IMG/VR virus record: IMGVR_UViG_3300028364_000014
Coordinates: 1-64,000 of that record
DNA: 64,000 nucleotides
Direction: 5' to 3' (one strand)
The notes beneath the pieces are model-generated. The model was given only the letters and a program-made list of their open reading frames with translations, made no database searches and was not told where the DNA came from. Positions within the stretch are counted from its first letter, which is position 1, and the number at the start of each line of letters is the position of its first letter. A program made the translations under genes and the position numbers. This document shows, piece by piece, positions 1 to 61,094 of the stretch.

Positions 1-3000
1 AGGACCAGACATAGATGCTTTACCTTTAAGCTGGCTTGCTCGATACTTTTGTCCAAAGTCTGAATCCTTTAAATTATTCAAACCTCCAGTCAACTCTTGT
101 ACAATCTTTTGGGCTTCCTCTATTTTAGCGGTCATTTTATCAGAAAACTGTCCGCCACCACCAGTTGTAGCAGCCATACCTCTACCAGCACCTAACATTA
201 CTCCGGCATTATCTGCGATAGAATGAATATGTACAGGAACTACTTTTCCTGAATCATAAGTTAAAGGTCCTCCTCCTGTAAATGAGGGAATTCCTGTGCT
301 TCCACTACCCGTAGAGGCCATCCCTCCTCCTCCACCTACAGAAGTAGCACCAGTACCCATGCTTGGCGGAATGTTAGAAAGATTATATTGACTCCCCTCT
401 TTTAAACGGGATCTGGATTGTTTATACTTTTCTTCAAGGCTTAAATCTGATTTTTCAAATAAAGACCCCAAAAAATCACCCTCTTTAGCCTTAGTAGCAG
501 CAGCTTTAGTAAGCCTATCTAATTGTTCTAACAAAGCTAATTTTTTACGAATTTTGTCATTTTCTACATTAGTCTTCTCTTCATCATTAGGGTCTACCTG
601 ACTACGAACAAAAACCGCAGCATCGTCTGCGTACTTATCTTCTAATTGAATTTGGTCTGCCTTATCCATAACAGGCATTCCTACTGTACGATTTAATTGT
701 TCTAGTGCTTTATAAGCCTCATTAATTGGTTGATCCATGATATCTTTTACAAATGGTAGATGGTTATCTTGGGCTATTCTATTCATTGGAGCGATCTCTA
801 GAATATCTTTATTACCTTCTAACTGAGCATTTATACTCGCAATTTTTTTCTGGTCATTAAAAAGATTTTCTACAGTGGATTGCCCTAACAAAGCGTAACT
901 ACCTAAATCATCTTTCCCATAAGAACTAAGATCACCGAAAGAATCTTTTAAGTTTTTTGCTACAGCCCGAGCTTCTTTAAACTTCTTCTCAAAAACCTTA
1001 CGTTCGTCACTATCTCGTAATTTAAAATTCTTCAGTTCTGGTGCAGCCACATCATCGTATTTCTTATTATATCTAGTACGCTGGGAATAAGGACTAGCTG
1101 CAGAAGTCCTTAAATGATACAAAGGTGTAAGATGCTCTTCAGCCGTATTCTTTATATCTATGCCTTTTGATCTCATTTGATCCCCTATTAAATTTTCAGC
1201 ATACTCTCTAGGCTTCTTAGTACCTAATTTAATATTTCGTTTAGTAGGAGACATCTTGGCAAGATCCCGTTCCACACCCTCTATAGCAGCTTCTTGAATT
1301 TGTCTGCTTAATTCCTCTAAAAAACTATTAAAACCTAAAGCTTCAGTGATATAAGCCTTTAATGCGGAACGATCTAACTTACCTTCAACTTTGTCTTGTG
1401 CTAAAGAGGTGGCTTTAAATTTATCCCCTCCGCCTTGAGCTATCTTCAATGCATCATCAAATAAGTCACTAGTAGACATCCCGCCTAATCTTATACTAGT
1501 AGCTTTTTTCTGAGCATCAGAAAAATCCTTCAAATCACCATAGGATTTATTAGTCTCGATATTACTCTGTAGCTCAGCTACACCTTTAGGTCCTTTAGAT
1601 AATGACCCAACTATCTCACTGGCAATAGGAGTCTCACCAGCATGCTTAACATCCATGCCCTTCTGGATACCAACCCTCACTAGTTCGTTAACCATAGTAT
1701 TTAATTCATTACCCATACCTTTACCAAGCGACTTAAGGTCCATTGGGAATCTTTTCTGTAACTCGACAGAAGGACTAAAATCTGCTGTATCACTAATCTC
1801 TCCCTTGCCAAAACCTAGATTACTTTCAAATATCTTCAGTACTCTATTTAATCCCTCAGTATCTTGTCCAGTATTAATTTTATATAATTGAGCATTTACA
1901 GTATTAGCATGCTTAGCTTCGTATAATTCGTCTCTCACACCTAAATCAATAGATTTACCTACACCTTCTGGTAAGGTAGCTAGAGCCGCCCTAAGCATCT
2001 CAATGTTAATGCCTTTATCATCACCAAGTTTAACACTGTCCAAGGTCTTTACAACACTATCTATAGTTTTGTCATCTCTAAAAATATTTCTTGCTACATT
2101 TTCTAATACTTGTGCTGGTTCAGGGGTAACTCCGGTAGAGTTCGGTATATTAGAAAGAATATCCAACCGTTTTGATTTATCTAAATACTCTAGATCTTCG
2201 GTGAGAAAAGGGCTCTCTAAAAATTTAAAACCTTCTTGTTCTGGAAACTTCTTATTAAACTTCATCTGCTGCTCAGCAAATAAAAATTCACCTGTGGATT
2301 TTTCACCAGTAGTAGCACCGTAAGTAAATGAATCTCTAAACACTTGAGCAGTGGAATTCACATCTTTATCAAACGTGGTTATTTTTTTATAATGTTTTGC
2401 AATGTCTTGTCTAGCCGCCATTGTTTGAGCTGAATGAACTTCTATCTGATCACCGTCAAAATCAAGTTTTTGTTGGTGCGCTATATATTTAGGAATCACA
2501 TCAGATACGGCTTTATTTAATTGATTTATAGTACCAGTTAATTTTTTAATTTTATCAAGGTCTGGGTCTTCCTTATCCCATTCCTCTTCTCTTTTAGCAC
2601 TTAACCCTGTTATTACATCCTCTACTTTATTTTTAGCTTCAGCAAAACCACCTAGATCCATCTCTGGAACACCAGGAGCCATCAGAGTATGTTTAGCTAG
2701 AAATCTACCGCCCCCATCTTTACTCTCTTCTTTTAATAACTTAGCTTCATAGGGCTGAACTGAAGAAGTTCCAGTAAAAGGATAACGAACACTCTCTATA
2801 TAAGGAGTTAGTTCGTTTTTTAATTGGTCTCTAACATCCATCTTATTGACTTCATCCATACCAGAGGGATTACCTGTTTCTAATAATTCCCTATACTCCA
2901 ATAACTCTTTTAAAGTCTCCCCTTGAGTTTGCTTAACCCTTTTTAAATCCCCAGTATTATCTTGAGCGTACCTACGTTTAAACCTAGCTGGTAATTTTTT

Positions 3001-6000
3001 AGCATAATCCTCTGACACACCAAGTTCATGCTGTTTTAAGGTTACAAAACCTTTATCCTTTTGATTCTTAATTATCTCAGAATGACCTTTTGATACACCC
3101 TTAATTTTATTAGCGGCTTCTTGTAAAGATTTTATTTCTTCAGTACCAAGATCAGAGTCTTTTGACACACTTTCAAGAGCTTTAGCAAAAGCATTTAAGT
3201 CATCAGTCTTATCCACCATCGCCGTAGTGGCTTTAGCCATAATAGCTGGAATCTTACGTGTAAAAAAAGCTTCTTGTACAGAACCAGTTTTCCCTAAAAC
3301 AGTTTGAGCAAGCGTGTGATAATATTCTATTTTTGCTCTATCTAAACTATCCACAGCCTGCTGTAATCGATCTTCCTTAGTGGCAGGAGTAACCTTCAAC
3401 CCCTTTGCTAATTTATTAAGGTCTTGAACCCCAGATCTAAAACTCTCATCTATCATAGAGTCAACGTCATAACGTCCTTGATGTTTTAATGGAGAAGACT
3501 CACGTTTACTAGGATCTAACCCTATTATTTGATCAACAGCAGCATTAATAGTCTCAGAATAAGCTTGAGGTTCTTTTTGACCACGTTCCTTTTGTTTTGT
3601 GTAAAGCTGTCCCATAACGTAATCTTTTTTAGTTCCACCTCCCCTATTAAATGCCTGATCTACCTGACTATCCCCCATTACATCAGTCAAGCCGCGTAAT
3701 GTCGCCTCTAAACTAGATTGATCTTGCGGATCTAAAAAATCTTTATATTGTATTTTACCTTGCTCATTTCTACCTTTACCATCTACAGAAACTACACGAT
3801 CTACCTCTTCACGCAGCTCCTGCATATGTTTTATAATCCTACCCTTTGTATCAGATTTATTGGTACTACCGTCATCACTTATCTCGGCACCATTAATAAT
3901 ATCTTCAAGATGTTTTGCAGAGTTAATTACCTGAGTTAGTCTTCTGGATACCCCATCCAAGCCCCGTTCTCCAGCTAGTAAAGGTTCTGGATAAGTAGTC
4001 CTTGCTAAAGCCCCCGGCACATAAAAAGACTCTTTTTTACTTATATCCCTTGTATCTGGAATAGAAACATCCATGGCCCCTGGAAACTTGGCTGTATCTA
4101 ATACAGTACTAACTAAACTCCGTTCCGGATCTAAATCTTTACCAAAACCACCAGTAGACCCGTAAAAAGAATGTAACTCATCTAAACCTACCTTCTGAGC
4201 TGAACCTAACAAACTTTGTTTTAATTCAGGAGAGTCTGTATTTAAAACCTGTAACCCTTTTAAATACTCCCAGTGCTTTCTTGCGTCTAAAGGAATCTCA
4301 CCAGAAACTCCTTGCATCATTGCAGAATCTTTACCAAATATGGTAGAGTAGGCACCATAAGCCGGTATATTTAGTTTCTCACCTTTAACTTGATTCTCTA
4401 TGTCAGACTTGCTCCACGCTGGATTAGCACTTGGATCTTCAACTATCTCTACAAACTTAGGACCAACAAAACCTTTCCTAGCTTTACCAAACTCATCTAT
4501 AATACGTGAGTAATAACTACTTTTAGCTTCTAAAGCTGCAGCTGCGTTTGCTTCTGTAACCGCTTTATCTCGTTTAGATAAAGACTCGGTTTCATCTTCT
4601 GAAAGTACGCCCCCCTTAGTCTTTTTATCTCTAAGTCCCTTTGCCTCAGTACCAGATATCAAACCCCTACTGACTGTCATATCCTTTAACAAAGAATCAC
4701 GTATGGACCCTTGTGACTTTCCAGTGCCTGAAAAACCCAAAACTTTACTATATTCACCTAGACTAGGAAATAACTCTTTACCTTCTTCCATAGTACCAAG
4801 CATGCTTTTATAAGTATTAGTATCAAACTTAGTATTTAATGTTGTAGACCCTTGCCAGCCAGATCCAATTACGTTATTCATCATCATCTCAAGGCTTTCT
4901 GTTTGAAGACCACGTTTACCAGCATTACTAGAGTTAATTCTAATATCTATAGGTTTTTCTTCAAACTGTTTAGCTCCTTCTACTTCCTTACGATGTAACA
5001 TTTTTACACCAGCTATACCAGATAAACCTTGTTCTAACGAACCCCCAAAAGAATTAACCATTTTCTTGGCATCCTCAAAAAGATCCGATTGTACCATTGC
5101 ATCTTTTTCAGAAACCACCCCTGCTGATTTATCAGTAAACATACTCATCATAAATTTACTACCACTAGCTTTTAACTGATCCTTTAATAAATCAACGTCC
5201 TTACCTGTGTACTTGGTCCCTGTTTCAGAGTCCGGGTCACTTCTTAGAATAACTGCTCTATTTTTTTGTATAACCTCAGAAAGTAACGAACCCATACTTT
5301 TTGGAAGAATAGCAGTACCTAATCCTGCTTTTTCTCTCTCAGAATCACTTAGTACTTTTATATTTTTAGTCTTATAGGCGGCTTCTAATACAGACGAATC
5401 TTTAAACCCTTTAGAAGGAGATACAGCCACTCCCTTCATACCATACCTGGTAGTAAATTTTCTACCATAGTAGTTAAAAAAGGTTTCAGCTATCTTAGCG
5501 GTCTGTACGTTTATATCCTGTCCCCTAGCTACGGTAACAGCCTTCTGTATATCTGTTATTAGTGTTTTATCAGCCCTACCTCTATACTTTTGTGGCACAC
5601 CTAGTACATTTTGAAATACTCTATTAAGTTCATCTATTTGCGCTAACGGATCTGTATCAGTAAGTACATTACCCTGCCCTTTCTTTCCGCCTTCCCCTTT
5701 AATTCTAGATCTAATATCTTCCACACTGATTGCATTACTCGGTAGATCTCGTAAATTACCTTCACTTGTTATTAAATCCAATCTACCTAAAGCGTCAGGC
5801 TGCACGATTGTTTTAGTAACACTGGTAAGTACTTCTGCTAATTTACCTGAAATAACCATCTGGTCTTCAAATGTATTTGCAGTACTTCTTAACTCAGCTA
5901 TTACATTGAAACCATAACCTTGATCCCCGTACCTGCCGCCAGCAATCTGCTCGTTCTCCCTAGTAGACCTTAATCCTGGAAACTCAGTACCAGGCACACC

Positions 6001-9000
6001 TTTTTGTCTGTAAGCCATAGCATTAGTAGTACTGGCAATATTTCTGCCTGCCTGCTGAAATTGTTGTCCAAAAGGTGACATCTCAGGTAAAACATCAGAG
6101 TGCATTTTCAAATTAGTAGCCTTTAAACTACTAAGATATTTACTGTCTTCCTTAAAAGATGATCTGTATTCATCTAACGTAGAGGCGGAAGACTCAGGAA
6201 CACCAAGGGTAGATAAAGTTGTAACATCTTGTGGTATATTTCTAGCATACTCAGTAGTAGATAATACCTTAGATTCATTCATATAGTTTTTTAATACCAT
6301 ATTTAAATCACGTATATAACTTTTAGATTGATCAGGATCTAACCCAGCTGCACCTTTCTCATAAACCGGCGAGGTCATAGTCATCATATTGACTATTTTT
6401 TCTTGATGTGCATATCTTCTTGGTCTAGAGGGGTCTGCTATAGGTATTGTACCCACTAGCTTACTTAGATAAGACTCATACTCGCGAACTGTTTTATCAT
6501 GATTTGGATTTTTTGTAAGTTTATCAATTGGAGACTCTCCTGGAGCGTAATTGGATAGTACTTTTTCAAATACTTGGTATATATTTTTAAAATCAACTGT
6601 TTCCATACGTTTAACCACATCAAGAGCAGACACTCCAGCACCATCCATAGCTTGTATGAATTGCCCTACTGAAATTGAACCATCCTTTAAACTTTCACCC
6701 ATTTGATCTATATTTCTAATAGCTTCTACTTTAAATGTTTCAGGGTCACCTTGCTCCGTACGTGCTAACTCCGCTGATCTAACAATAGCCCCTTTTTTAT
6801 ATGTGCTCACTAATCTACCTTTATTTGCGTCACTTGCAGAAGCGAGATCTGTAAGCATCTCCTGAGCTAGTTTATTAGACTCAACATACTCTTTTCTATC
6901 AGGGCGTATACCTGCTTTTTGTATTCTTTCAGTGTACTTTTCTGGCATATTAGTACCAAAACTTTTAAGCTGATTAAATAGATTTTCAAAACCAGTTTTA
7001 TATTCGGCAAATTTAGGTATAACTCGTTGACTACCAGTAGATGTTTCAAATATTTGAGCACCTGTCTCAGTAAGACGTGCTGCGGGTACAGCTAAAGTCC
7101 TGGTAAGAGCACTCCTACTTTTACTACCTTTTGACGATCCAGCTACTCCAATATTAAGCCGTTTATTGGCTTCCATCTCCCCTAAAGTTTCCTGGTAAAT
7201 ACTCTCTAACTTACCAATATTCATACTATTAAGCATATCACTCATTTTTTTAGGAACGCCTGGACCAGCTTCATTAGTTTTATTTTTAATTCTAACTAAA
7301 TTTTCAGCAGAGTCTGGTTGAGAAAACTTCCAAGACTTTATATCATCAGTGGGTACACGCTTTAACCAAGTACCTACGGATTCACCAAGATTACTCCTAT
7401 TCTTATTTAAAAGGTCATTCTTAACTGTATCTTTAAATAAGCTTTTAAGTGCCTCAGGTGATTGAGTCCTATCAACAGGAGTAAAATCTTTATTATCCCG
7501 CCTCATTTTTTCAATTTCTTTAGCGATAGCCCCAACATCCGCAATTTGAAAAGTCCATTGTTTACCTGCTACTTTCTTATTAATACCAGAAGCAAGCTTA
7601 AAATATTCTGACGGATCTTGAGCGTCATCCCCCCTAAGAATTTTCCACTTTTGTGACTGAGTGATGACTTTAGTTTTTTTATCATAAGTTTGTTCAACAG
7701 GACCTCGCAATGCCAAGCCTTCTTCAACCTGCTTAATCATAAAATTCCTTAGATCCATTAAAGATTTAGCAGTAGTATTAACATTCTCTTTAATGATCTG
7801 TCTTGCTTTCTCTCCTGTATCAATACGGGTTTTAGGTGTGGGCAATTCATAATCTTTTCCTGGGGTAATTACATCTGATTTATACCCGTATAAAGTTTCT
7901 TTTGATGTTTTATACTTGTAGTCTGCAGGAGCCGATTTTTGACTAGTTTTAATATCCTTACCAAGTCTAAACTTCTCAGACTGCTCCCTCATACGCTGTC
8001 TTACTTCAATTTGTTTAAGTTTATCTTGCTCATTTGTACTTGGTAGTCTATTTTGAGAAGTAGAACCTGTAGTTCCAGAAAAAGGATTAGATGTTTGTTG
8101 GCTATTTATAGCGTCTGTTAAATCAGATAACTTGTCACCAAGAGAGGCTATTAACCTAGTAATATCACGAGGTAATATTTCCTTAGACAATAAGTTACCA
8201 GCAGTTTTAGTGTCTATACCACTAGTAATCACAGCTTTAAGTTTATTTGGGTCGTCTTTAGAAGCAGCAATCTGTGTTACTACTTTCATAATAGCGTCGT
8301 AAAGGCCCTGTGATGACTGGTTTTTAGGTTCAACGTAAAGATTAGATCTTAAAGTATCTTTAAGTACTGATAAAAACTGGTTAAGGTCAGAAAATATTTT
8401 TTCATCGGGCTTATTTCCTGTAGTACTTGAAGCGGATACTGCGACATTAAATTGTTGTTTAAAATCAGACTGTAGTTGAGTTATAAGTTTTTGAGAATCA
8501 GTAACTAGTTCAATATTAAACGGTGTAGAGTCAGCCTTCTTTCTAAGCTTTTCTAGATCACTTATTATAGTATTTTTAGACACAGAAGCAGTGAAATCGA
8601 CATTCTTACTCCTACCTAAGTCGTCTAAATCTTTTTTTGCACCTTTAAGACTTTTATCTGTAACTACAGATAAGGGAACCTCAATACCGGCTAATGACTT
8701 TATATCTTTAATAAAAGTAGCTACTTCTCCAGCACCTTCTACAACAAGTTCTAATTTAGCATTCCAATCTTTAACCTCTTTATTATTGGTAACACCTTTA
8801 GGTACTAATTCTTTAGGTATCATAGATACAGCGTCAGTTAACTTAACTAAATTCCCCTTTAAAGCATCAGCATCTATAGACCCAGAAGGACTACCCTTCA
8901 ATTCTTCTACTAGCTTAGTTAGCTGCTTCATAACAACAATAAAATCAGGAACACTCTCTAACTTTTTAGCTATAGCATCTAAAGATTTTCCCACCTCAGA

Positions 9001-9921
9001 CTCTTTTGCTTGAGGGATTTTGTTTATTACTTTAGATATTTCTGAAGTTATTACTTGAGCTAATTTTAAAGGATCTTCAGTGGCTTTTTTTACCACCGCA
9101 GTCTTCTTCTTAACAGCGGACGCCCTAAAACTTGTCACACTTTCTTTAAAAGCTGATGCCCCATCATTAAACTCTTTAGGAAGCTTCTTAACTTCACTAC
9201 GCACCAAAGTAATATCAGCAATTAACTCTTTAAAAGCAGTACCCATTTGAGCCATCAAACTTAAATACGTTTTAAACTCGGTTATATCAAAACCACCACC
9301 ACTTTTACGCTGCTCATTTACAGCCTTACCAGCAGAAGCTATTTTAGTAAAACTTGACTCTAATCTTTTTAAAATAGCAGAAATATCTTTGAGAGAAGCT
9401 ATCATATCAGTAGGCATAGCTGCTTTTAAATTAGAATTCAATGCATTCTCAATACCTTTAAAAACTGAGGGATCTATTGTTACTACACCCTTAGTGTTTT
9501 TAGATAACTCATCTGCAAAGTTTTTATATGCGATTTCTCTTTGCTTACTAGATATTTTCAATGCGGAAGCAACATCTACCAGGCCTGACTCTGGAGACTT
9601 TTGTACTTTAGCAGCTACATCTTTAACAGACTGCTTAGTGATGTCCACAACAAGGCGTTGTAACATATTGGCTAATTCAGTCTTGGTTACACCACCACTA
9701 TCTCCAGACGCATTACTAGTTATAACCTTACTAAGGATAGTAGGGAGTTCTTTTTTAATAGCAGATGCTACCGCATTAACGATACCGTCCTGCGTGCTTG
9801 ACATCCCCTTATTAAACTCAGTGTATAATTGCTTTAAGCTGGAATTTGGGGCTGACTGTTCATTTGCCCCTGAAGTGGTACCAGTAGATTTAATATTTAT
9901 ATTGACGTTTTTTTCGCCCAA
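1..9921 (-). CDS. Giant tape-measure-position protein containing a single-chain two-barrel (beta + beta-prime) RNA polymerase; 3' end beyond window
   Basis: TTG start at 9921 with GGAGG 7 nt upstream. The frame is consistent at every point checked down to position 1 (3307 codons); its absence from the ORF track fits an ORF running off the edge. In-frame motifs: ANTFEDQMVISG (~5845-5880), GRKFTTRYGMKGV (5428-5466), VLGKTGSVQEAFFTRK, SVRYPFTGTSSVQPYE (~2750-2793), LDFDGDQIEVH (DFDGD 2449-2463), IQKGMDVKHAG (1636-1668). Follows tail tube and chaperone genes. Confidence 0.85.
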   Translation of the reverse strand, partial: MGEKNVNINIKSTGTTSGANEQSAPNSSLKQLYTEFNKGMSSTQDGIVNAVASAIKKELPTILSKVITSNASGDSGGVTKTELANMLQRLVVDITKQSVKDVAAKVQKSPESGLVDVASALKISSKQREIAYKNFADELSKNTKGVVTIDPSVFKGIENALNSNLKAAMPTDMIASLKDISAILKRLESSFTKIASAGKAVNEQRKSGGGFDITEFKTYLSLMAQMGTAFKELIADITLVRSEVKKLPKEFNDGASAFKESVTSFRASAVKKKTAVVKKATEDPLKLAQVITSEISKVINKIPQAKESEVGKSLDAIAKKLESVPDFIVVMKQLTKLVEELKGSPSGSIDADALKGNLVKLTDAVSMIPKELVPKGVTNNKEVKDWNAKLELVVEGAGEVATFIKDIKSLAGIEVPLSVVTDKSLKGAKKDLDDLGRSKNVDFTASVSKNTIISDLEKLRKKADSTPFNIELVTDSQKLITQLQSDFKQQFNVAVSASSTTGNKPDEKIFSDLNQFLSVLKDTLRSNLYVEPKNQSSQGLYDAIMKVVTQIAASKDDPNKLKAVITSGIDTKTAGNLLSKEILPRDITRLIASLGDKLSDLTDAINSQQTSNPFSGTTGSTSQNRLPSTNEQDKLKQIEVRQRMREQSEKFRLGKDIKTSQKSAPADYKYKTSKETLYGYKSDVITPGKDYELPTPKTRIDTGEKARQIIKENVNTTAKSLMDLRNFMIKQVEEGLALRGPVEQTYDKKTKVITQSQKWKILRGDDAQDPSEYFKLASGINKKVAGKQWTFQIADVGAIAKEIEKMRRDNKDFTPVDRTQSPEALKSLFKDTVKNDLLNKNRSNLGESVGTWLKRVPTDDIKSWKFSQPDSAENLVRIKNKTNEAGPGVPKKMSDMLNSMNIGKLESIYQETLGEMEANKRLNIGVAGSSKGSKSRSALTRTLAVPAARLTETGAQIFETSTGSQRVIPKFAEYKTGFENLFNQLKSFGTNMPEKYTERIQKAGIRPDRKEYVESNKLAQEMLTDLASASDANKGRLVSTYKKGAIVRSAELARTEQGDPETFKVEAIRNIDQMGESLKDGSISVGQFIQAMDGAGVSALDVVKRMETVDFKNIYQVFEKVLSNYAPGESPIDKLTKNPNHDKTVREYESYLSKLVGTIPIADPSRPRRYAHQEKIVNMMTMTSPVYEKGAAGLDPDQSKSYIRDLNMVLKNYMNESKVLSTTEYARNIPQDVTTLSTLGVPESSASTLDEYRSSFKEDSKYLSSLKATNLKMHSDVLPEMSPFGQQFQQAGRNIASTTNAMAYRQKGVPGTEFPGLRSTRENEQIAGGRYGDQGYGFNVIAELRSTANTFEDQMVISGKLAEVLTSVTKTIVQPDALGRLDLITSEGNLRDLPSNAISVEDIRSRIKGEGGKKGQGNVLTDTDPLAQIDELNRVFQNVLGVPQKYRGRADKTLITDIQKAVTVARGQDINVQTAKIAETFFNYYGRKFTTRYGMKGVAVSPSKGFKDSSVLEAAYKTKNIKVLSDSEREKAGLGTAILPKSMGSLLSEVIQKNRAVILRSDPDSETGTKYTGKDVDLLKDQLKASGSKFMMSMFTDKSAGVVSEKDAMVQSDLFEDAKKMVNSFGGSLEQGLSGIAGVKMLHRKEVEGAKQFEEKPIDIRINSSNAGKRGLQTESLEMMMNNVIGSGWQGSTTLNTKFDTNTYKSMLGTMEEGKELFPSLGEYSKVLGFSGTGKSQGSIRDSLLKDMTVSRGLISGTEAKGLRDKKTKGGVLSEDETESLSKRDKAVTEANAAAALEAKSSYYSRIIDEFGKARKGFVGPKFVEIVEDPSANPAWSKSDIENQVKGEKLNIPAYGAYSTIFGKDSAMMQGVSGEIPLDARKHWEYLKGLQVLNTDSPELKQSLLGSAQKVGLDELHSFYGSTGGFGKDLDPERSLVSTVLDTAKFPGAMDVSIPDTRDISKKESFYVPGALARTTYPEPLLAGERGLDGVSRRLTQVINSAKHLEDIINGAEISDDGSTNKSDTKGRIIKHMQELREEVDRVVSVDGKGRNEQGKIQYKDFLDPQDQSSLEATLRGLTDVMGDSQVDQAFNRGGGTKKDYVMGQLYTKQKERGQKEPQAYSETINAAVDQIIGLDPSKRESSPLKHQGRYDVDSMIDESFRSGVQDLNKLAKGLKVTPATKEDRLQQAVDSLDRAKIEYYHTLAQTVLGKTGSVQEAFFTRKIPAIMAKATTAMVDKTDDLNAFAKALESVSKDSDLGTEEIKSLQEAANKIKGVSKGHSEIIKNQKDKGFVTLKQHELGVSEDYAKKLPARFKRRYAQDNTGDLKRVKQTQGETLKELLEYRELLETGNPSGMDEVNKMDVRDQLKNELTPYIESVRYPFTGTSSVQPYEAKLLKEESKDGGGRFLAKHTLMAPGVPEMDLGGFAEAKNKVEDVITGLSAKREEEWDKEDPDLDKIKKLTGTINQLNKAVSDVIPKYIAHQQKLDFDGDQIEVHSAQTMAARQDIAKHYKKITTFDKDVNSTAQVFRDSFTYGATTGEKSTGEFLFAEQQMKFNKKFPEQEGFKFLESPFLTEDLEYLDKSKRLDILSNIPNSTGVTPEPAQVLENVARNIFRDDKTIDSVVKTLDSVKLGDDKGINIEMLRAALATLPEGVGKSIDLGVRDELYEAKHANTVNAQLYKINTGQDTEGLNRVLKIFESNLGFGKGEISDTADFSPSVELQKRFPMDLKSLGKGMGNELNTMVNELVRVGIQKGMDVKHAGETPIASEIVGSLSKGPKGVAELQSNIETNKSYGDLKDFSDAQKKATSIRLGGMSTSDLFDDALKIAQGGGDKFKATSLAQDKVEGKLDRSALKAYITEALGFNSFLEELSRQIQEAAIEGVERDLAKMSPTKRNIKLGTKKPREYAENLIGDQMRSKGIDIKNTAEEHLTPLYHLRTSAASPYSQRTRYNKKYDDVAAPELKNFKLRDSDERKVFEKKFKEARAVAKNLKDSFGDLSSYGKDDLGSYALLGQSTVENLFNDQKKIASINAQLEGNKDILEIAPMNRIAQDNHLPFVKDIMDQPINEAYKALEQLNRTVGMPVMDKADQIQLEDKYADDAAVFVRSQVDPNDEEKTNVENDKIRKKLALLEQLDRLTKAAATKAKEGDFLGSLFEKSDLSLEEKYKQSRSRLKEGSQYNLSNIPPSMGTGATSVGGGGGMASTGSGSTGIPSFTGGGPLTYDSGKVVPVHIHSIADNAGVMLGAGRGMAATTGGGGQFSDKMTAKIEEAQKIVQELTGGLNNLKDSDFGQKYRASQLKGKASMSGP

Positions 9922-10001: not shown

Positions 10002-11006
10002 CTATCCGCGTTTCGTCCTTTTTTTCACGTCAGCTCTATCTTTTAATTTTTTTGCCTCTCTAGGTGTATCATACGTTATATCACGATACAGAGAGTTAGA
10101 AGCAGTAATAATAACCTCTTCTTGATCAAATGCAGATAACTTACCAGGTGTCTTATGTTTGCTTCGCCGTGAAGCGTCCTCGCGTGTCCTTTCCTCATAG
10201 AATGATTTCATATAAGCATCTAATGAATCATCATCCTCAATAACTAAGTCACTTGGTCGATCCTCTGGCATCATTTGATAAATACTATCGTAGTAATTAG
10301 ACCAATATGCTAAGCTTAACATATCAGTAGTGTAATCAGAAGAAGGTTTTCCGAACAACTTTTCTGAAACCTTTTGACTATTTACATACCTAATACGCCA
10401 TAAACTATGTCTAGCTATATAACGAATTATATTGGTAGGTATACCATAATAAAACCTTAAAAAAGTATTTAAAACTTCTTCTCTAAAAGATATATTTGTA
10501 GTCTCTTTAAAGTACTTTAATTTACTCCAGTATTTATTGTACCTATGGTCATAGGTACTATCCCAACATAAATATAAAGTACGTTCCTCATTAGCTCTAA
10601 CTTCAGCAGACATCATCATCCTAGAAGATTTTTTGCTAGATATTACAAACATTTCTTCTTTGATCTTTTGTATAATTTTCTTTATACGATCTTGATTAGC
10701 CCTAACTCTAGTAGTCTTCCCTAATAAAATTTTTTGGGCATCCAACTGTGACTCTAATTTAGATAATTTTTTTTCATCTTCAGCTGTAAAAATATTACGA
10801 TCTCTTATCAATTTCTCTAAGTCTATATCATTCAGGAGACCCTCATCGAGAGCCTCCTGATATGCCATTGTATAGATAGCATCTGCGTATAGTTTTACAT
10901 CATTAGTGGGATACTTAAAGATTATAAACTCTTTATTTATTTGAGTTATTAACTTACCAGAAGAAATTCTCACTAAGTATTGATCTACTTCAGCATCTGT
11001 TATCAT
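10002..11006 (-). CDS. Putative tail assembly chaperone (334 aa)
   Basis: ORF directly upstream of the tape-measure-position gene; helical and charged; call by synteny only. Confidence 0.45.
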   Translation of the reverse strand: MITDAEVDQYLVRISSGKLITQINKEFIIFKYPTNDVKLYADAIYTMAYQEALDEGLLNDIDLEKLIRDRNIFTAEDEKKLSKLESQLDAQKILLGKTTRVRANQDRIKKIIQKIKEEMFVISSKKSSRMMMSAEVRANEERTLYLCWDSTYDHRYNKYWSKLKYFKETTNISFREEVLNTFLRFYYGIPTNIIRYIARHSLWRIRYVNSQKVSEKLFGKPSSDYTTDMLSLAYWSNYYDSIYQMMPEDRPSDLVIEDDDSLDAYMKSFYEERTREDASRRSKHKTPGKLSAFDQEEVIITASNSLYRDITYDTPREAKKLKDRADVKKRTKRG

Positions 11007-11018
11007 TCTTTTGTGCCT

Positions 11019-11789
11019 TTATTTTTTCTTAGTACTCGTGGATTTTTTAACTGGTGCCTTTTTAACACCTTCTTTAATAGAGGAATCATCTGTTGATTTA
11101 GGGGTTTCAATCTTACCAGGCTTATTTACATCTTTCTCCAAATCAACTAGTCTTGCTTTTTCAGCCTCTACAGAAGCCTGATTAATAATATCTGTTTGTA
11201 CTTCTTGCATTGCTACTGCCTCTGGTGTATTATCAAGAAAGTCAGACTCATATCCCTGCAAAAATAACATAACTTCATACCTTGATTTCAATGACAGTGC
11301 CTGATCTTTTGACGACAAAAAAGCATCATAATCTGGCCAAACCTTGGTACCGTCATCATACTCAATCATACGAGATGTTAGTGCCTCAAGTCTAGCGTCA
11401 TCCGCCATCTGCTCACAAGTGTTACTCATAGGACCACTAAGACGCTGATTCCACTGAAAAAGATTATCTCGTGCTTTAGAAATCTGAATTGCCAACTCAG
11501 CTTTTTCTTCATTATTGCTAGCTTCGCGTAGTCTAAGAATATACTCATTCAGAATAGTAGTTAACTCCTCTACTCTGTTTTCAAAAGCTTCTCCAATCAC
11601 CCCGCGCCTCTTAAGAATATCCAACATCTCTGCACTAGTAGTAATACCCTCCACTAAACAATTAGTGTATGTTTTACTATACTGCCAATCAGCCTTTCTA
11701 ATAGCATCAGCACTTGGAGTACCAATAAAATACTCTGTCTCATCCGTACCTAAAAAACTTCTTCGATCACTTAAATTTTCGTTACTCAT
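11019..11789 (-). CDS. Putative tail assembly chaperone (256 aa)
   Basis: ORF between tail tube and tape-measure gene; Lys-rich C-terminal tail; synteny only. Confidence 0.45.
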   Translation of the reverse strand: MSNENLSDRRSFLGTDETEYFIGTPSADAIRKADWQYSKTYTNCLVEGITTSAEMLDILKRRGVIGEAFENRVEELTTILNEYILRLREASNNEEKAELAIQISKARDNLFQWNQRLSGPMSNTCEQMADDARLEALTSRMIEYDDGTKVWPDYDAFLSSKDQALSLKSRYEVMLFLQGYESDFLDNTPEAVAMQEVQTDIINQASVEAEKARLVDLEKDVNKPGKIETPKSTDDSSIKEGVKKAPVKKSTSTKKK

Positions 11790-11804
11790 TTTTAATTTTC
11801 TCCT

Positions 11805-12059
11805 TTACCCTTTATTCCTAAACTCAATTACTTCTTCAGTGAGTCTGGTATATTCAATGTTATAGTTATCCAACTCTTTAGCCATATTTCGCATACAATT
11901 GTTCCCTGCCCTTAGGATTTTAGATCTTAATTGTTTAAAATTTTCTGTAGGACAAGCCACGTGTGCAAAATCTAAAGACTGCTCCATCATTTTAGTGATT
12001 TCTTTCCTAGTATCTTGTATTAATCTAGCTCTGCTAGCTTCAATATATTTTTTATCCAT
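11805..12059 (-). CDS. Hypothetical protein (84 aa) in tail module
   Basis: ORF with AAGG-like RBS, co-oriented with neighbours. Confidence 0.6.
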   Translation of the reverse strand: MDKKYIEASRARLIQDTRKEITKMMEQSLDFAHVACPTENFKQLRSKILRAGNNCMRNMAKELDNYNIEYTRLTEEVIEFRNKG

Positions 12060-12089
12060 AGCCCTTTTCCTTCCTTTACCGTATTTATA

Positions 12090-12113
12090 TAAGGGAGGGA
12101 ATTACCCCTCCCC
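12090..12113 (-). terminator. Stem-loop after tail tube gene, possible terminator
   Basis: GGGAGGGG-TAATT-CCCCTCCC perfect 8-bp hairpin just after the stop at 12123; weak U-tract. Confidence 0.45.
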
Positions 12114-12122
12114 TAATCAAAA

Positions 12123-13599
12123 TTATGCGTTACGCGCAAGCCTAGCTTTTGCAGTAGCATAATTAATATCACCTTTTATAACGTATAGATCATTAGTGGT
12201 TCTAAATCCAAAAGTCTGAGTAGCATTAGATCCAACATCTAGAGACATACCTTCATCAGTAATCTTCAGGTTTTTAACTACAACCGTTTTTAGAGCACGT
12301 TCAGTATCCCCAGCTGCATAGGTATCAAGAACACCGTCAAGGAAGTAATCCTCACCGTCAAGAGCAGAACCACTGACAACTTTTCTATCAGTACTAGTTC
12401 CTCCAGCCTCCTCATCTGTTTGTTCATATACCTTAACTACGAGGATAAGATTATCCTTAATCATAAGATCACTAAGTTTAATATCCCCCATAGTATCCAA
12501 ATCATCCAACTTTCCTGCAAACTTTGCCCAGTTCTCCAAATCACCAGCTGTAGTATCTACAGTCAATGTAATAGGAATAGGCATAGTTAGAGGTCTATCA
12601 TAAGGTCCTAAATGCCCTAACTCAGTAAGAGGCTCACGAGTCAAATCAACTGAAATATTAGCACTCGTCAAACGCCAAGCATTAGCAAACGCTGTAGCAG
12701 AAGAATCCGGATCTACGATATACACCTCTACCTGACCCTGTCTAAGGGCACCAACACTATCAGGTCTTTCAGTAGGCTCTTCAAGCTCAACAAAATAATT
12801 ATTAGTAGTAGGAGTATAAGCATCCGCAGAGTAAATCAACTGAAGCCTGTCACCATCTGCTGGAGCATTAGTTCCTGTAGGTAGATAAAGCTTATGTTGT
12901 GCTGGCATAGTGGTATTATCATAAACATAAGTAGTCGCAGCAGCTGCCGTGCCGGTTACAACCTCAACGTTAATCATCTCATTTTTACTTTCATCGAACC
13001 AAGTAACAGCAGGAGCTCCACTATCACTCTTCCGTAGAAAACCAAGCCCTGTAGTTAGTGTAGCTACATCATTACCAGCCCCTAAGGTCATCATAACAAA
13101 TCCATCTGTTAGAGCCCCAGCTGATAAAAGGGTAAACTCCTCGTAGTTTACAAACCTACCATCATTTAACAACCACATCTTGTTATCAGTCTCTGCTCCA
13201 TAATTCTCTGTAGCATTTGCTCCAGTAGAGTAACTAAATTCGAGACTATTAACAAAAAGCTCATCAAGAAACAATGTCTGATCAATATTATTAGACAATG
13301 TTCCAATAGAACATTCCTCTTGTACTGGTGCCCATAAAGTTACACCAGGCAAGTTACCACAAGTTACTGCAAAGTCTGCTAGAGATACCCCATGCAGATA
13401 ATTAGCAGTCCCTGTTGGATCTGATACCAAATTCGCATTACCATCAACTGCGGTAATAGCCATCTCAACCTTGGCTGGGATAACCTGAGCCAATGTGGCT
13501 AAAGTCTTAACATCCCCAAAGTCATTAGTGTTCAATGTTACTGAAACGGCAGGGACATCATCTACTACGTCGATTATATCTAAGTGACCAAGCTCAAAT
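12123..13599 (-). CDS. Major tail (tube) protein, exon 2 (spliced product about 528 aa)
   Basis: Joining exon 1 (...GAC AT) to 13599 (A TTT GAG...) gives the continuous frame TSEDIFELGHLDIIDVVDDVPAVSVTLNTNDFG, in frame with track ORF 12123..13535. Beta-rich, Thr/Asp/Gly-rich, at the tail-tube position. Confidence 0.8.
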
Positions 13600-14665
13600 C
13601 ATTCTGTTACTTTTAGTGACCTCAGCTTTACCTGTTAGGCGGGGAAAGTTCTTCGACTCTCCCTCTTGGCGTCTCCGCCAAGTTCAGACTGTACCTTCAC
13701 CCTTTTTAAAAGGGGTTTCACACGCAGTCGTTGGGGAACAAATTTATAATGTATACATTCTGGTAATATATATGTTACCATATCCAGTAAATCATGTAAG
13801 TATTTAGTTTTACCTAGTCTTATAGTACTATTATAAGTATCAATACTTATAGTACCTTTAAAAAATTTACGTAAAGCTACTATTAAGACCTCTATTTCTT
13901 CTAAAGTAAAACTACATGTAGCAATTGAACCTCTTAAGGCTGTTTTACTACCATGAAAAGAAAAACTTCCATCATCAGCTAACCAAATACAAAGAGCTAA
14001 TAAATCTAAATCTTCTATTACATCAGTAATTACTCTTTTTTTACCTTTAACATAAAACTTATTAAAGTACTCAGTTATATCTGGATGAGCAATTGTGTTA
14101 ATAAAATAGTAACCTGAAGAGTATGAATTTTTACCATTAATAATTTTAGGTCCTGGTTTTTCTGCTAAAGTTATTTTTTTAACAAATGGAGATAATAAAT
14201 CTTTTTTCCATTTTAAGTAATCTAATTGTTTAGTACAATGACCAATTTGCAATCTAGCATTTTTAGATTTCCTATTCTTTAGCAAAGAGCCGTCTCCTAA
14301 AATAGAGCCTAATATAACAGATCTATGAACATCTGATATTTCTACAGATCTTAACTCTTCATAAACAGTCATACAACTAGGTAAAAGTTCTATATCATAA
14401 GATTTATACCACGAATATATAGTACTATAGGGTATAGATAACTCTGTAGCAACTTTGGCCACAGATTTATGACAATCTATTAATTCTTGAAGTTTTTCTT
14501 TACTTACTTTATTTCTTTTCATTATAAATCCTTTCCTGCGGATTGTCTATATCTTTAAGATTATTACTACCAATTCAGGTTAGTACCTAAAGCTTAACTA
14601 GAGTTTCCCGCATACCGTGAAATTTTTTCTCTTACTTGTTACCAAATAAGGGACACATTTAGTTT
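13600..14665 (-). ncRNA. Group I intron (1066 nt) interrupting the tail tube gene
   Basis: P1 GGACAU/GUGUCC with U.G at the 5' splice site; P10-like AAAU/AUUU; core elements GCGGGAAACUC, GACAAUCCGCAGG, ACGACUGCG, AAGGUACAGUCUG; terminal G at 13600; splicing restores the frame. Confidence 0.9.
13635..14522 (-). CDS. Intron-encoded LAGLIDADG homing endonuclease with N-terminal HTH
   Basis: Two motifs, VILGSILGDGSL and LCIWLADDGSF; the ORF reads through the 3' half of the intron core. Confidence 0.88.
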   Translation of the reverse strand: MKRNKVSKEKLQELIDCHKSVAKVATELSIPYSTIYSWYKSYDIELLPSCMTVYEELRSVEISDVHRSVILGSILGDGSLLKNRKSKNARLQIGHCTKQLDYLKWKKDLLSPFVKKITLAEKPGPKIINGKNSYSSGYYFINTIAHPDITEYFNKFYVKGKKRVITDVIEDLDLLALCIWLADDGSFSFHGSKTALRGSIATCSFTLEEIEVLIVALRKFFKGTISIDTYNSTIRLGKTKYLHDLLDMVTYILPECIHYKFVPQRLRVKPLLKRVKVQSELGGDAKRESRRTFPA

Positions 14666-14867: not shown

Positions 14868-15929
14868 CTATACAACCGATAACCTTTCCTTTATATTATA
14901 TCTTTTATACAAAATTGATTGATACCAATTCTTATGCCAAGTTCTATCTTTATTGGCTTTACTATTACAAGAACGACAGATGGTTATTAAATTACTTGGG
15001 TTACAGTTCTTTTTATCATAATCAATGTGATGAATTGTTAAATCCTTTGGATTTTTAGAATTACAGTACGGATTTAAACATTTATTTCCATCACGATTTC
15101 TTATGTCTTGTTTGTATTCTTTATCCTTCCAGGCTTCACAGTACGGCTCAAAGGTGATACCACCCTTCCAATTATAGTTTTTATCCCCTGATATACTTAT
15201 AAAATAGCAATCAGGGCATCTATGTCCAGACGACCAATCTTTCCAATTTATAGAGTTATAATGCCCTTTAGAACATTTATACTTTAATTTAGTACGTGCA
15301 TTTTTATACTCATTACTCAATAAAATATATTCCTCACTTTCAAAGGATTTTCTTATTTCATATATTGTGGGCATTATTTTAGCCATATAACACTTTGAAC
15401 ACCTAGAGCTATTACGATTCCAATTTTCCCAACTTACTTTGTAAACATGCCCTTTTGGGCATATAGAAATAAGTTTACTATTTCTATTAATATATTTATC
15501 ACTTAATAAAGTATAACCTTCTAACTCAAAAGAAGCTTTTATTTTTTTAAATGATGCCCTCTTTTTACCAGAGCACTCCATACACCTATTACCAAGTAAC
15601 CAATTATTCCAAATAACACTACCTAAATGCCCTTTAGGACAAATATACTTTAATTTACTTTTAGAATTTATATATTTATCAGTTAAAAGTACATAGCCAG
15701 CATCATTAAAAGAGGCTCTCACAAAATCGATAGATAATTTCCTATTACCTACACATTTAGAACATCTTACACCCTTTCTTAAATGATCTATACGCATACT
15801 ACCCTCGTGCCCTTTGTCGCAAACATATTTAAAAGATTGTCTAGAATTAACGTATACGGTTGACACTAAAGTATACTTAATTTCTTGAAACTCTTTTCTA
15901 ACTCTCTCTATTGTTAATTTTGAAGGCAT
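14868..15929 (-). CDS. HNH homing endonuclease, family A (CxKGH zinc-ribbon repeats)
   Basis: Repeated YxCxKGH...W..W....RCxxC units; C-terminal LTIHHIDYDKKNCNPSNLITICRSCN. Confidence 0.85.
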   Translation of the reverse strand: MPSKLTIERVRKEFQEIKYTLVSTVYVNSRQSFKYVCDKGHEGSMRIDHLRKGVRCSKCVGNRKLSIDFVRASFNDAGYVLLTDKYINSKSKLKYICPKGHLGSVIWNNWLLGNRCMECSGKKRASFKKIKASFELEGYTLLSDKYINRNSKLISICPKGHVYKVSWENWNRNSSRCSKCYMAKIMPTIYEIRKSFESEEYILLSNEYKNARTKLKYKCSKGHYNSINWKDWSSGHRCPDCYFISISGDKNYNWKGGITFEPYCEAWKDKEYKQDIRNRDGNKCLNPYCNSKNPKDLTIHHIDYDKKNCNPSNLITICRSCNSKANKDRTWHKNWYQSILYKRYNIKERLSVV

Positions 15930-27958: not shown

Positions 27959-28136
27959 ATGACACCGCTTTTATATTATACCTATTCTTAAGCACCACCC
28001 GATGCCAACCTTTATGCCCCTTCTGACAAATACAATCTAATTTATAACCATTATTGACATACTCTTTACTAAGTAAAGTATAATCTTCTGAATCAAATGA
28101 CTCTTTAACAAATGCATATGTAAGTCTCTTACTCAT
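27951..28136 (-). pseudogene. Internally deleted remnant of a family A HNH endonuclease
   Basis: First CQKGH repeat fused directly to the family A C-terminal tail (W..VLKNRYNI); nuclease core absent. Confidence 0.65.
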
Positions 28137-60744: not shown

Positions 60745-60755
60745 GGAGATTCAAG

Positions 60756-60848: not shown

Positions 60849-60860
60849 TAAGGAGGCATT

Positions 60861-61058: not shown

Positions 61059-61094
61059 TATATTAACCTATAACTGCCCCTTACTTAGAGGGGC

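What the first reader, a model, noticed from the sequence alone, without database searches (positions are those of the whole stretch)
1..9921. Two-barrel RNA polymerase embedded in a giant tape-measure-position protein
Seen: one minus-strand frame (TTG at 9921, running past position 1; absent from the ORF track) carries, in the correct order, GYGFNVIAELRSTANTFEDQMVISG (cf. beta GYNFEDS), GRKFTTRYGMKGV (cf. beta/Rpb2 GDKFxSRHGQKG with both catalytic-centre lysines), VLGKTGSVQEAFFTRK (cf. beta-prime switch 2 LxGKxGRFRQNLLGKR), SVRYPFTGTSSVQPYEAKL (cf. NRxPTLHRxGIQAFEP), LDFDGDQIEVH (cf. NADFDGDQMAVH, three Mg-binding Asp) and IQKGMDVKHAG (same Q-M-H-G spacing as trigger loop TQLTMRTFHIG). About 1250 low-complexity residues precede it. 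The gene follows tail tube and chaperone genes. Known: Thermus phage P23-45 gp96 is a tape measure fused to a virion RNAP, and crAss-like phages carry single-chain virion RNAPs. Inference: a virion-packaged RNAP delivered through the tail, in an AT-rich phage apparently unlike Thermus phages, which would extend this rare architecture to another lineage.
Basis: partly seen in the sequence, partly recalled or inferred. Interest (0 to 1): 0.95.

Follow-up and report, generated by a model that had tools for sequence, protein, structure and literature searches.

The report
RNA-polymerase-like module in giant tail protein
An uncultured AT-rich jumbo phage encodes a giant protein, cut off by the contig end, that carries the catalytic signatures of a cell-type RNA polymerase and whose full-length relatives also carry a tail tape-measure domain, so this fusion, known only from Thermus phages, probably exists in a second, widespread lineage.

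Summary
The open frame and all six motifs are real. The minus-strand frame 9921->1 has 3307 codons and no stop (chance about 1e-117). It starts at a TTG behind a GGAGG and is cut by the end of a 237.9-kb IMG/VR contig.

The protein belongs to a large uncultured-phage family. There are 44 IMG/VR loci and 109 clusters at 50% identity, and most full-length members have 6,800-8,000 aa. Every relative that reaches far enough carries a Pfam PF10145 tape-measure domain about 750-800 aa after the polymerase-like region. The tape-measure reading is therefore supported by homology, but that domain lies outside this window.

The polymerase reading rests on short colinear motifs matching E. coli beta and beta'. 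Their key residues are invariant in the family and persist in very distant relatives.

It is not confirmed at fold level:
- HMM searches against PDB found no RNA polymerase.
- hhalign reached at best 43% probability.
- AlphaFold2 was confident for the beta'-like core only.
- Foldseek found nothing significant.

The family is not detectably related to P23-45 gp96. The upstream "tail tube and chaperone" genes could not be identified.

Verdict: a probable new variant of the tape-measure-fused virion RNA polymerase, confidence about 0.7.

The parts
1..9921 (-). Giant ORF, first 3307 aa. It is truncated at its 3' end by the contig end. By homology at least about 1,190 aa are missing, including the tape-measure domain.
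7942..9921 (-). Variable N-terminal region, aa 1 to about 660. It is K/S/A-rich and poorly conserved. Some relatives carry a DnaQ-like exonuclease domain in this region.
6082..7914 (-). Family-specific region, aa about 670-1280, with no match to any known family; clearly conserved from about aa 900. Its aa 900-1290 part was modelled with pLDDT mostly 75-90.
3937..6075 (-). Beta-like module, aa 1283-1995.
5845..5919 (-). Motif around TFEDQMVISGK, aa 1335-1359. It matches E. coli beta 811-822 (NFEDSILVSERV). E1343, T1350, F1351, E1352, D1353 and Q1354 are invariant in the 11-sequence alignment A1; E1343, E1352 and D1353 stay invariant and F1351/Q1354 stay >=90% conserved in the wider alignments.
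5428..5466 (-). Motif GRKFTTRYGMKGV, aa 1486-1498. R1487, K1488, R1492, G1494, K1496 and G1497 are invariant.
4888..4956 (-). PIDIRINS...KRGLQTESLE aligns with E. coli beta 1094-1114 (PVDIVLNP...SRMNIGQILE).
   Evidence: conservation
1042..3345 (-). Beta'-like module, aa 2193-2960. AlphaFold2 gave pLDDT 74 and pTM 0.63.
3253..3300 (-). Switch-2-like motif VLGKTGSVQEAFFTRK, aa 2208-2223. It aligns with E. coli beta' 325-347.
3010..3045 (-). It aligns with E. coli beta' 359-370 (PYLRLHQCGLPK).
2737..2793 (-). Motif SVRYPFTGTSSVQPYEAKL, aa 2377-2395. It aligns with beta' 423-441 (NRAPTLHRLGIQAFEP) and ranks 4th of 1387 positions. R2379, P2381, F2382, T2383, G2384 and S2387 are invariant. The model predicts two strands here.
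2434..2466 (-). Metal-binding motif LDFDGDQIEVH, aa 2486-2496. It aligns with beta' 458-469 (NADFDGDQMAVH). D2487, D2489, D2491 and H2496 are invariant. The 12-mer score is 41.8 (z = 8.2; 0 of 300 shuffles reached it).
1816..1962 (-). Candidate bridge helix, aa 2654-2702. The model shows a long helix kinked at a conserved TG. This is my assignment from the model's shape only; it has no sequence support against beta'.
1636..1668 (-). Candidate trigger loop IQKGMDVKHAG, aa 2752-2762, at the tip of a helix-loop-helix in the model. Q, K, G, D, K and G are conserved, but M and H are below 90%.
1..1041 (-). Poorly conserved tail of the window copy, aa 2961-3307, ending in a Gly-rich stretch. In relatives it leads on to the tape-measure domain.
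10002..13535 (-). Four upstream genes (334, 256, 84 and 470 aa), conserved in synteny with the giant gene and of unknown function. The 470-aa product is about 60-73% identical across relatives.

Best explanation
The gene encodes the N-terminal 3307 residues of a giant tail protein. In its full-length form this protein joins a single-chain, cell-type (beta then beta') two-barrel RNA polymerase module, at about aa 900-2960, to a C-terminal tape-measure domain.

Proposed mechanism (all steps inferred):
1. The tape-measure part places the protein inside the tail during assembly.
2. At infection the protein is ejected ahead of or together with the DNA.
3. The polymerase module transcribes the first phage genes without help from the host polymerase, as shown experimentally for P23-45 gp96.
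4. The variable first ~660 residues may be an exchangeable cargo. Some relatives carry a DnaQ-like exonuclease there.

Shown here:
- the open reading frame;
- the motifs and their conservation;
- the tape-measure domain in the same ORF in relatives;
- the head/tail gene context.

Inferred: the two-barrel fold, catalytic activity, virion packaging, delivery and early-gene transcription.
For: Gene and family:
- The frame is open and has a plausible start.
- The family comprises 44 IMG/VR loci and 109 clusters at 50% identity. About 50 of these clusters have 6,400-8,000 aa.

Tape-measure link:
- PF10145 PhageMin_Tail is found at P0001 aa 4116-4312 (E 5.5e-25), and also in P0006, L003 and L008.
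- The same domain is found by blastp in all 41 relatives that reach that far, at 53-71% identity.
- The gene lies downstream of the terminase, portal and major head protein genes on the same strand.

Polymerase signatures:
- Key motif residues are invariant across sequences that are only 26-50% identical overall.
- Distant relatives still show FEDQ/S, then G.K...R.G.KG, then DFDGD in that order. P0071, for example, has GFEDSIIIGG and GDKFISRGGNKG.
- Profile test of the beta'-like module against E. coli beta': the three best 12-mer windows are colinear. They fall on the switch-2-like stretch, on LHQCGLP and on NADFDGDQMAVH. The maximum has z = 8.2, and 0 of 300 shuffles reached either the maximum or the chain score. 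The wrong subunit gave nothing.
- hhalign top hits fall on the same motifs with the correct subunit. The best result was P = 2.4e-4, probability 43.5%.
- AlphaFold2 predicts confident strands at four of the five motif positions where my reading of the beta' barrel expects strands; the first (aa 2226-2236) is only partly confident. A 70-aa helical insert sits before DFDGD.
- RNA polymerase chains appear among the top non-significant Foldseek hits, matched to the correct module. Pol I A190 is rank 4 for the beta'-like model. RNAP beta (7xya_C) is rank 3 and Rpb2 rank 27 for the beta-like model.

Precedent: PMC10770324.
Against: - No significant sequence or structure match to any known RNAP. Pfam, PHROGs and phmmer gave nothing. 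Family HMMs against all PDB chains gave none, although the published phi14:2 gp66 (6VR4), QDE-1 (2J7N) and T. thermophilus RNAP (2O5J) structures should be in that library (ids). Foldseek against PDB and BFVD had no hit at E<=0.001.
- AlphaFold2 twice gave pLDDT below 50 for the stretch holding the beta-like motifs. A second barrel is therefore not shown.
- The colinear-chain statistic for the beta-like module is not specific. The wrong-subunit control scored as high.
- The trigger-loop and bridge-helix assignments lack sequence support.
- The tape-measure domain of this very copy is off-window. It was not found elsewhere on the same contig.
- No transmembrane segment of the kind reported in gp96 was found.
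- It is unclear how a module of about 2,000 aa inside a protein of about 7,500 aa would pass through a tail tube.
Confidence: 0.7

Rival explanations
1. The protein is a giant tail or ejection protein whose polymerase-like module no longer polymerises. It would be an exapted structural or nucleic-acid-binding scaffold, or the acidic motif would bind metal for another reaction. One such possibility is a cell-wall-degrading double-psi-barrel domain like those often fused to tape-measure proteins.
For: There is no significant match to any RNAP by HMM, hhalign or Foldseek. The beta-like motif zone is not folded with confidence. The tape-measure identity is the only domain with a curated-threshold hit.
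Against: Not only DFDGD but also FEDQ, the two-lysine motif, the switch-2-like stretch, LKQHELG and RxP...SVQ match the correct RNAP subunits in the correct order. Their key residues are invariant and survive in relatives with little other similarity. That pattern points to selection on catalysis. No lytic domain was detected by Pfam.
Confidence: 0.15
2. The module is an active two-barrel polymerase with a different job. It could be an RNA-dependent RNA polymerase of the QDE-1 kind, a primase-like enzyme that starts phage DNA replication, or a PolD-like DNA polymerase.
For: Two-barrel enzymes include RdRPs and archaeal PolD (PMC10770324 section 11; PMC7824862). Sequence alone cannot fix template or product. 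Some relatives carry a 3'-5' exonuclease domain, and such a domain also accompanies DNA polymerases.
Against: Outside the barrels' catalytic loops the matching motifs (FEDS-type, switch-2-like, LHQCGLP) belong to the beta and beta' subunits of DNA-dependent RNAPs. According, PolD shares only the barrels with RNAPs. The fusion to an ejected tail protein fits early transcription, as in P23-45.
Confidence: 0.1
3. The motif resemblance is chance in a very long protein.
For: Each single motif is short. The individual hhalign P values are weak, from 2.4e-4 to 0.2.
Against: The top-scoring windows fall on known catalytic motifs of the correct subunit and in colinear order. For the beta'-like module 0 of 300 shuffles matched, and the wrong-partner control was empty. 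The motif residues are the invariant ones in a family with 29-40% mean column identity.
Confidence: 0.03

Closest known systems
Thermus phage P23-45 gp96, a tape-measure-fused virion RNA polymerase (Chaban et al. 2024, PMC10770324)
   Same: One giant polypeptide combines a DFDGD-containing two-barrel polymerase module, placed N-terminal, with a tape-measure part placed C-terminal. The likely role is transcription of the first genes by an enzyme delivered through the tail.
   Different: - No detectable homology: hhalign E values were 0.023-0.17 and phmmer found nothing.
- The gp96 polymerase is a compact module of about 800 aa at residues 327-1124. Here the conserved core spans about 2,000 aa and starts near aa 900.
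- The motifs here are of the cellular beta/beta' type.
- The tape-measure part here is PF10145, with no metallopeptidase hit and no transmembrane segment.
- Full-length relatives have 6,800-8,000 aa against 5,002 aa for gp96.
- The genomes are AT-rich, come from jumbo-sized contigs and are uncultured.
Bacterial RNA polymerase beta and beta' subunits (E. coli RpoB and RpoC)
   Same: The motifs are colinear in the order beta then beta':
- FEDS-type motif;
- G.K...R.G.KG;
- switch-2-like stretch;
- LHQCGLP;
- R.P...[GS][IV]Q;
- DFDGDQ..VH.

   Different: - The two parts are fused in one chain inside a tail protein.
- Similarity is confined to short motifs, and no HMM or Foldseek match is significant.
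- There are large inserts, for example about 105 residues between RxP and DFDGD.
- No Pfam RNA polymerase domain is detected.
crAss-like phage phi14:2 gp66 and the other single-chain two-barrel RNAPs (QDE-1, YonO, P23-45 gp64)
   Same: They are single polypeptides with both barrels. gp66 is virion-packaged and part of a block of large proteins.
   Different: Neither profile HMMs against PDB sequences nor Foldseek against PDB picked up any such structure. crAss-like phages have short tails and no tape-measure protein (my own knowledge).
Coliphage N4 virion RNA polymerase
   Same: It is a giant protein of about 3,500 aa that is ejected from the virion and transcribes early genes.
   Different: The N4 enzyme is a T7-like right-hand polymerase, not a two-barrel enzyme (PMC7824862). 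It is carried in the head of a short-tailed phage.

Membership tests
Two-barrel (double-psi beta-barrel) RNA polymerases | A DxDxD metal-binding loop in the beta'-type barrel, preceded by an [RK]xP motif | tested here: met
   R2379-x-P2381 and D2487-F-D-G-D2491 are invariant in the family. They align to beta' 423-441 and 458-469. The P-to-D spacing has a median of 104 residues, slightly beyond the x{20,100} filter used in PMC10770324 Suppl. Data 4.
Two-barrel (double-psi beta-barrel) RNA polymerases | Two conserved basic residues supplied by the beta-type barrel | tested here: met
   K1488 and K1496 in GRKFTTRYGMKGV are invariant. They align to E. coli beta 1063-1074 and persist in distant relatives. 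This holds at motif level only.
Two-barrel (double-psi beta-barrel) RNA polymerases | Two double-psi beta-barrel folds facing each other | tested here: inconclusive
   AlphaFold2 predicted confident strands at the beta'-type motifs. It gave pLDDT below 50 over the beta-type motifs in two runs. Foldseek gave no RNAP hit at E<=0.001.
Two-barrel (double-psi beta-barrel) RNA polymerases | Bridge helix and trigger loop after the beta'-type barrel | tested here: inconclusive
   The model shows a long kinked helix (aa 2654-2702) and a helix-loop-helix (aa 2736-2775). There is no sequence support against beta'. The M and H of the proposed trigger loop are less than 90% conserved.
Two-barrel (double-psi beta-barrel) RNA polymerases | Statistically significant sequence or profile similarity to a known member | tested here: not met
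   Pfam, PHROGs and PDB phmmer/hmmsearch gave nothing. The best hhalign result was 43.5% probability, P = 2.4e-4, over 22 columns. The literature describes this as typical for divergent RNAP families.
Two-barrel (double-psi beta-barrel) RNA polymerases | Template-dependent RNA synthesis | not testable with these tools
   This needs biochemistry.
Phage tail tape-measure proteins (PF10145 / TP901 type) | A PhageMin_Tail domain in the protein | tested here: inconclusive
   The domain is not in the 3307 aa held in the window, because the gene is cut by the contig end. It is present in the same ORF in relatives: P0001 at aa 4116-4312, P0006, L003 and L008. It is also found in all 41 relatives that reach that far.
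Phage tail tape-measure proteins (PF10145 / TP901 type) | Position in the tail module, after the tube and chaperone genes and before the distal tail or baseplate genes | tested here: inconclusive
   The gene lies downstream of the terminase, portal and head genes on the same strand. The flanking genes, upstream here and downstream in relatives, match nothing known. There is no frameshift chaperone signature.
Phage tail tape-measure proteins (PF10145 / TP901 type) | Presence in the tail lumen, with protein length setting tail length | not testable with these tools
   No isolate is available.
P23-45 gp96-type virion RNAP family | Sequence homology to gp96 residues 327-1124 | tested here: not met
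   hhalign of A2 and A4 against gp96 aa 1-1200 gave E values of 0.023 and 0.17, and only the DFDGD region aligned. phmmer and hmmsearch found nothing. The protein works like gp96 but is not a member of that family.

The most novel reading that the evidence does not exclude
This is a previously undescribed family of two-barrel RNA polymerases. It would be a fused beta-beta'-type enzyme of about 2,000 aa built into tape-measure polyproteins of 7,000-8,000 aa, among the largest phage proteins known. It would have arisen independently of the P23-45 fusion and be widespread in uncultured jumbo phages. If so, delivering a transcription machine through the tail is a recurrent strategy and not a Thermus-phage oddity.
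Probability: 0.5. Interest if true: 0.85.

Novelty: new variant of a known kind. Interest (0 to 1): 0.78.

Why it matters
The only documented tape-measure-fused RNA polymerase is in four related Thermus phages. A second, unrelated and far more widespread family would change that picture.

- It would show that coupling genome ejection to self-sufficient early transcription through the tail evolved more than once.
- It would add a new branch, with motifs unusually close to the cellular enzyme, to the two-barrel polymerase tree. That bears on the origin of cellular RNAP.
- It would sharpen a mechanistic question: how does a polymerase of about 2,000 aa inside a protein of about 7,500 aa get through a tail tube?
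- It would explain why motif-spacing filters used in earlier surveys could miss such enzymes.

Tried and rejected
Searches that found nothing:
- Megablast and tblastn of the gene and of aa 1250-3307 against 50,697 phage records gave no match.
- Pfam and PHROGs on the whole protein gave only noise.
- phmmer and two family HMMs against all PDB sequences found no polymerase.
- A broadened HMM that included distant relatives matched E. coli beta' only over the 24-aa DFDGD stretch, at 9.5 bits.

Structure attempts:
- A 1200-aa AlphaFold2 model spanning both motif sets (aa 1320-2519) was computed but lost on the server before Foldseek could run.
- The two replacement models gave no significant Foldseek hit in PDB or BFVD.

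Statistics and context:
- A first colinear-chaining test with low thresholds picked up noise and was discarded.
- The missing C-terminal part was sought on the same contig in IMG/VR, first with P0001's C-terminus and then with a tape-measure alignment. It was not found.
- The upstream 470-aa and 334-aa proteins were profiled against PDB, and the 470-aa family against 5.8 billion proteins. There were 756+ hits, all unnamed.
- Genes downstream of the giant ORF in relatives had no PHROG hit.
- A tail-chaperone frameshift was rejected because the 84-aa and 256-aa ORFs are in the same frame.
- No transmembrane segments were found, and the window holds no tRNA.
Full report
**Observation.** The minus-strand frame from 9921 to 1 translates into 3307 codons without a stop. 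The other five frames of the same stretch hold 102-514 stops. At this base composition the chance of such an open frame is about 1e-117. The TTG at 9921 sits 8 nt behind a GGAGG, and the previous gene ends at 10002. The ORF is missing from ORF lists only because it runs off the window. The window is the first 64 kb of IMG/VR contig IMGVR_UViG_3300028364_000014 (237,910 bp), and window position 1 is the contig end.

Two side statements did not hold.
- The residues before the motifs are not low-complexity; entropy is 3.7-4.0 bits. Only aa 1 to about 900 are poorly conserved. Homology with relatives begins near aa 640-780 in most and spans the whole length in two, and conservation is clear from aa 900 on.
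- The 'tail tube and chaperone' genes upstream could not be identified (see Context).

**A large family with a tape-measure domain.** A word-indexed search with aa 1300-2800 found 11 relatives at 28-50% identity. Four carry Pfam PF10145 (PhageMin_Tail), and one is named a TP901-family tape-measure protein by its source. IMG/VR holds 44 distinct loci, on contigs up to 269 kb. An exhaustive profile search of 1.84 billion cluster representatives found 109 proteins. About 50 of them are full-length at 6,400-8,000 aa, with the polymerase-like module at roughly aa 1,500-2,900.

The closest relative, P0001, has 4530 aa. It aligns to window aa 669-3300 at 45% identity and has PF10145 at aa 4116-4312 with E 5.5e-25. 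The same domain was confirmed in P0006, L003 and L008. It was found by blastp in all 41 relatives whose ORF reaches that far, at 53-71% identity, making it the best-conserved part of the protein. In P0001's contig the giant gene is followed directly by a second ORF of at least 4028 aa with a ComEA-like HHH_3 domain. In most relatives the two form one ORF.

By homology the window copy lacks at least about 1,190 C-terminal residues, including the tape-measure domain. I could not find them elsewhere on the contig. More distant PF10145 loci (L094-L110) show no polymerase-like module within 10 kb upstream, while L093 has a compact one. The module therefore looks like an addition to a tape-measure lineage.

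**Evidence that the module is an RNA polymerase.**
- Conservation. Across sequences only 26-50% identical, the invariant residues include several motif positions:
  - E1343 and TFEDQ 1350-1354;
  - R1487, K1488, R1492, G1494, K1496 and G1497;
  - G2210;
  - R2379, P2381, F2382, T2383, G2384 and S2387;
  - L2486, D2487, D2489, G2490, D2491 and H2496.
- Distant relatives keep the same order of motifs. P0071 has GFEDSIIIGG and GDKFISRGGNKG. P0088 and P0094 have VFEDQI and STKITTR[FY]GSKG. All have [NK]LD[FYL]DGD..[VI][HFI].
- Profile test, beta'-like module. I scored family profiles in 12-residue windows against E. coli RpoB and RpoC (fetched) with 300 shuffles. The three best windows against beta' are colinear:
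  - aa 2202 with beta' 325 (switch-2-like);
  - aa 2485 with beta' 458 (NADFDGDQMAVH).

  The maximum was 41.8 (z = 8.2). No shuffle reached the maximum or the chain score, and the wrong subunit gave nothing.
- Profile test, beta-like module. The maximum was reached by 8 of 300 shuffles and the chain score by 2 of 300.
- hhalign, against single sequences and against profiles of 30 proteobacterial beta and beta' sequences built, put its top hits on the same motifs with the correct subunit. The best was P = 2.4e-4 at 43.5% probability. A second hit covered beta' 359-445.
- A weaker extra match links aa 1657-1678 to beta 1094-1114.

**Evidence against, or missing.**
- Nothing reaches conventional significance. 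Pfam, PHROGs and phmmer found nothing.
- Family HMMs against all PDB chain sequences found no polymerase, although the published gp66, QDE-1 and cellular RNAP structures should be in that library (PDB ids).
- AlphaFold2 on aa 2120-2960 gave pLDDT 74 and pTM 0.63. Confident strands fall at four of the five motif positions where my reading of the beta' barrel expects strands (aa 2374-2379, 2387-2396, 2412-2416 and 2492-2496); the first, aa 2226-2236, is only partly confident. A 70-aa helical insert precedes DFDGD. A long kinked helix and a helix-loop-helix follow.
- In two independent runs the stretch with the beta-like motifs came out at pLDDT below 50.
- Foldseek found no hit at E<=0.001 in PDB or BFVD. 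RNA polymerase chains do appear among the top non-significant hits for the matching module, but this cannot be weighed.
- The chain statistic for the beta-like module is not specific, because the wrong-subunit control scored as high.
- The proposed trigger-loop alignment is not reproduced, and its M and H are less than 90% conserved.

**Context.** All genes from about 58 kb down to position 1 are on the minus strand. They include a large terminase (30829-33819), a portal (28129-30108) and a major head protein (22885-23958), followed by the giant gene.

The four genes just upstream of the giant gene (470, 84, 256 and 334 aa) are syntenic in nearly all relatives. They match nothing in Pfam, PHROGs or PDB profiles. 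The 756+ database relatives of the 470-aa protein are all unnamed. The 84-aa and 256-aa ORFs are in the same frame, so there is no chaperone-type frameshift. Genes downstream of the giant ORF in relatives are also unknown.

The phage is far from anything cultured. There is no nucleotide match, and the portal is only 21-25% identical to those of Bacillus siphophages.

**Mechanism.** The most likely reading is a tape-measure-anchored, tail-delivered virion RNA polymerase that transcribes the first genes on the incoming DNA, as demonstrated for P23-45 gp96 (PMC10770324).
- Shown here: the gene, the motifs and their conservation, and the tape-measure domain in relatives.
- Inferred: the fold, catalysis, packaging, delivery and the early-gene role.
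- The variable N-terminus may be exchangeable cargo, since some relatives carry a DnaQ-like exonuclease there.
- The split into two ORFs right after the tape-measure domain in one lineage suggests a module boundary there, and perhaps proteolytic processing in the fused forms (inference).

**Comparison and novelty.** The protein works like gp96 but is not a member of that family. hhalign against gp96 aa 1-1200 gave E values of 0.023-0.17, and only DFDGD aligned.

It differs from gp96 in several ways:
- core size, about 2,000 aa against about 800 aa;
- motif type, cellular beta/beta';
- tape-measure domain type;
- lack of transmembrane segments;
- total length;
- genome type.

The P-to-D spacing has a median of 104 residues. 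That exceeds the [RK]xPx{20,100}DxDxD filter used in the published survey, which may explain why the family was missed. Full-text searches found no other report of a tape-measure-RNAP fusion. I rate this a new variant of a known kind, with interest 0.78 and confidence 0.7 that it is an active tail-delivered RNAP.

Noticed in passing
window 30829-33819 (-): The large terminase (996 aa) is interrupted by an intein carrying a LAGLIDADG endonuclease at about aa 134-509 (Pfam Intein_splicing plus LAGLIDADG_3). The terminase halves lie on either side.
   Followed up: partly
window 13635-58117 (-): The window is unusually dense in free-standing homing endonuclease genes, at least 11 in 64 kb.
- HNH: 14868-15929, 18237-19085, 21125-21991, 21992-22801, 38954-39994, 42099-43019, 45779-46780, 49926-51413 and 56990-58117.
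- LAGLIDADG: 13635-14522.
- GIY-YIG: 27305-27958.
Several sit between structural genes.
   Followed up: partly
window 40436-41488 (-): This 350-aa protein matches Pfam PF25216 Volactin at E 3.5e-60. From my own knowledge, volactin is an actin homologue first described in haloarchaea. A phage-encoded actin-like protein could serve genome positioning, or hint at the host.
   Followed up: no
window 55732-56661 (-): This 309-aa protein has a caspase-type Peptidase_C14 domain (E 1.9e-31).
   Followed up: no
window 48193-49533 (-): This gene encodes a PhoH-like protein (PHROG 2765, E 5e-62).
   Followed up: no
L001 18923-28923; P0012-P0062: In the closest relative a second ORF of at least 4028 aa, with a ComEA-like HHH_3 DNA-binding domain near its C-terminal end, follows the giant gene directly. 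In most relatives the two are fused into single ORFs of 6,800-8,000 aa, among the largest phage proteins.
   Followed up: partly
P0008 aa 254-371; P0009 aa 194-297; P0010: Some relatives carry a DnaQ-like RNase_T 3'-5' exonuclease domain in the variable N-terminal region. Two of them sit in bins labelled Methanogenium and Thorarchaeota, although binning of viral contigs is unreliable.
   Followed up: partly
window 12123-13535 (-): The 470-aa protein upstream of the giant gene is highly conserved: about 60-73% identical among the relatives' loci, and 57-72% among the listed database hits. It has at least 756 database clusters on contigs up to 311 kb, none with any annotation. It may be a major tail protein of a very abundant uncultured phage group.
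   Followed up: partly
window 11019-12059 (-): The 84-aa and 256-aa ORFs are in the same frame, separated by a single TAA and five codons. They could be one gene with a stop codon, or two separate genes. This is not a -1 frameshift arrangement.
   Followed up: partly
window 60313-64000 (+): Gene orientation and GC skew both switch near 59-60 kb. Genes run on the plus strand beyond that point, so this may be a module or transcription-unit boundary.
   Followed up: no
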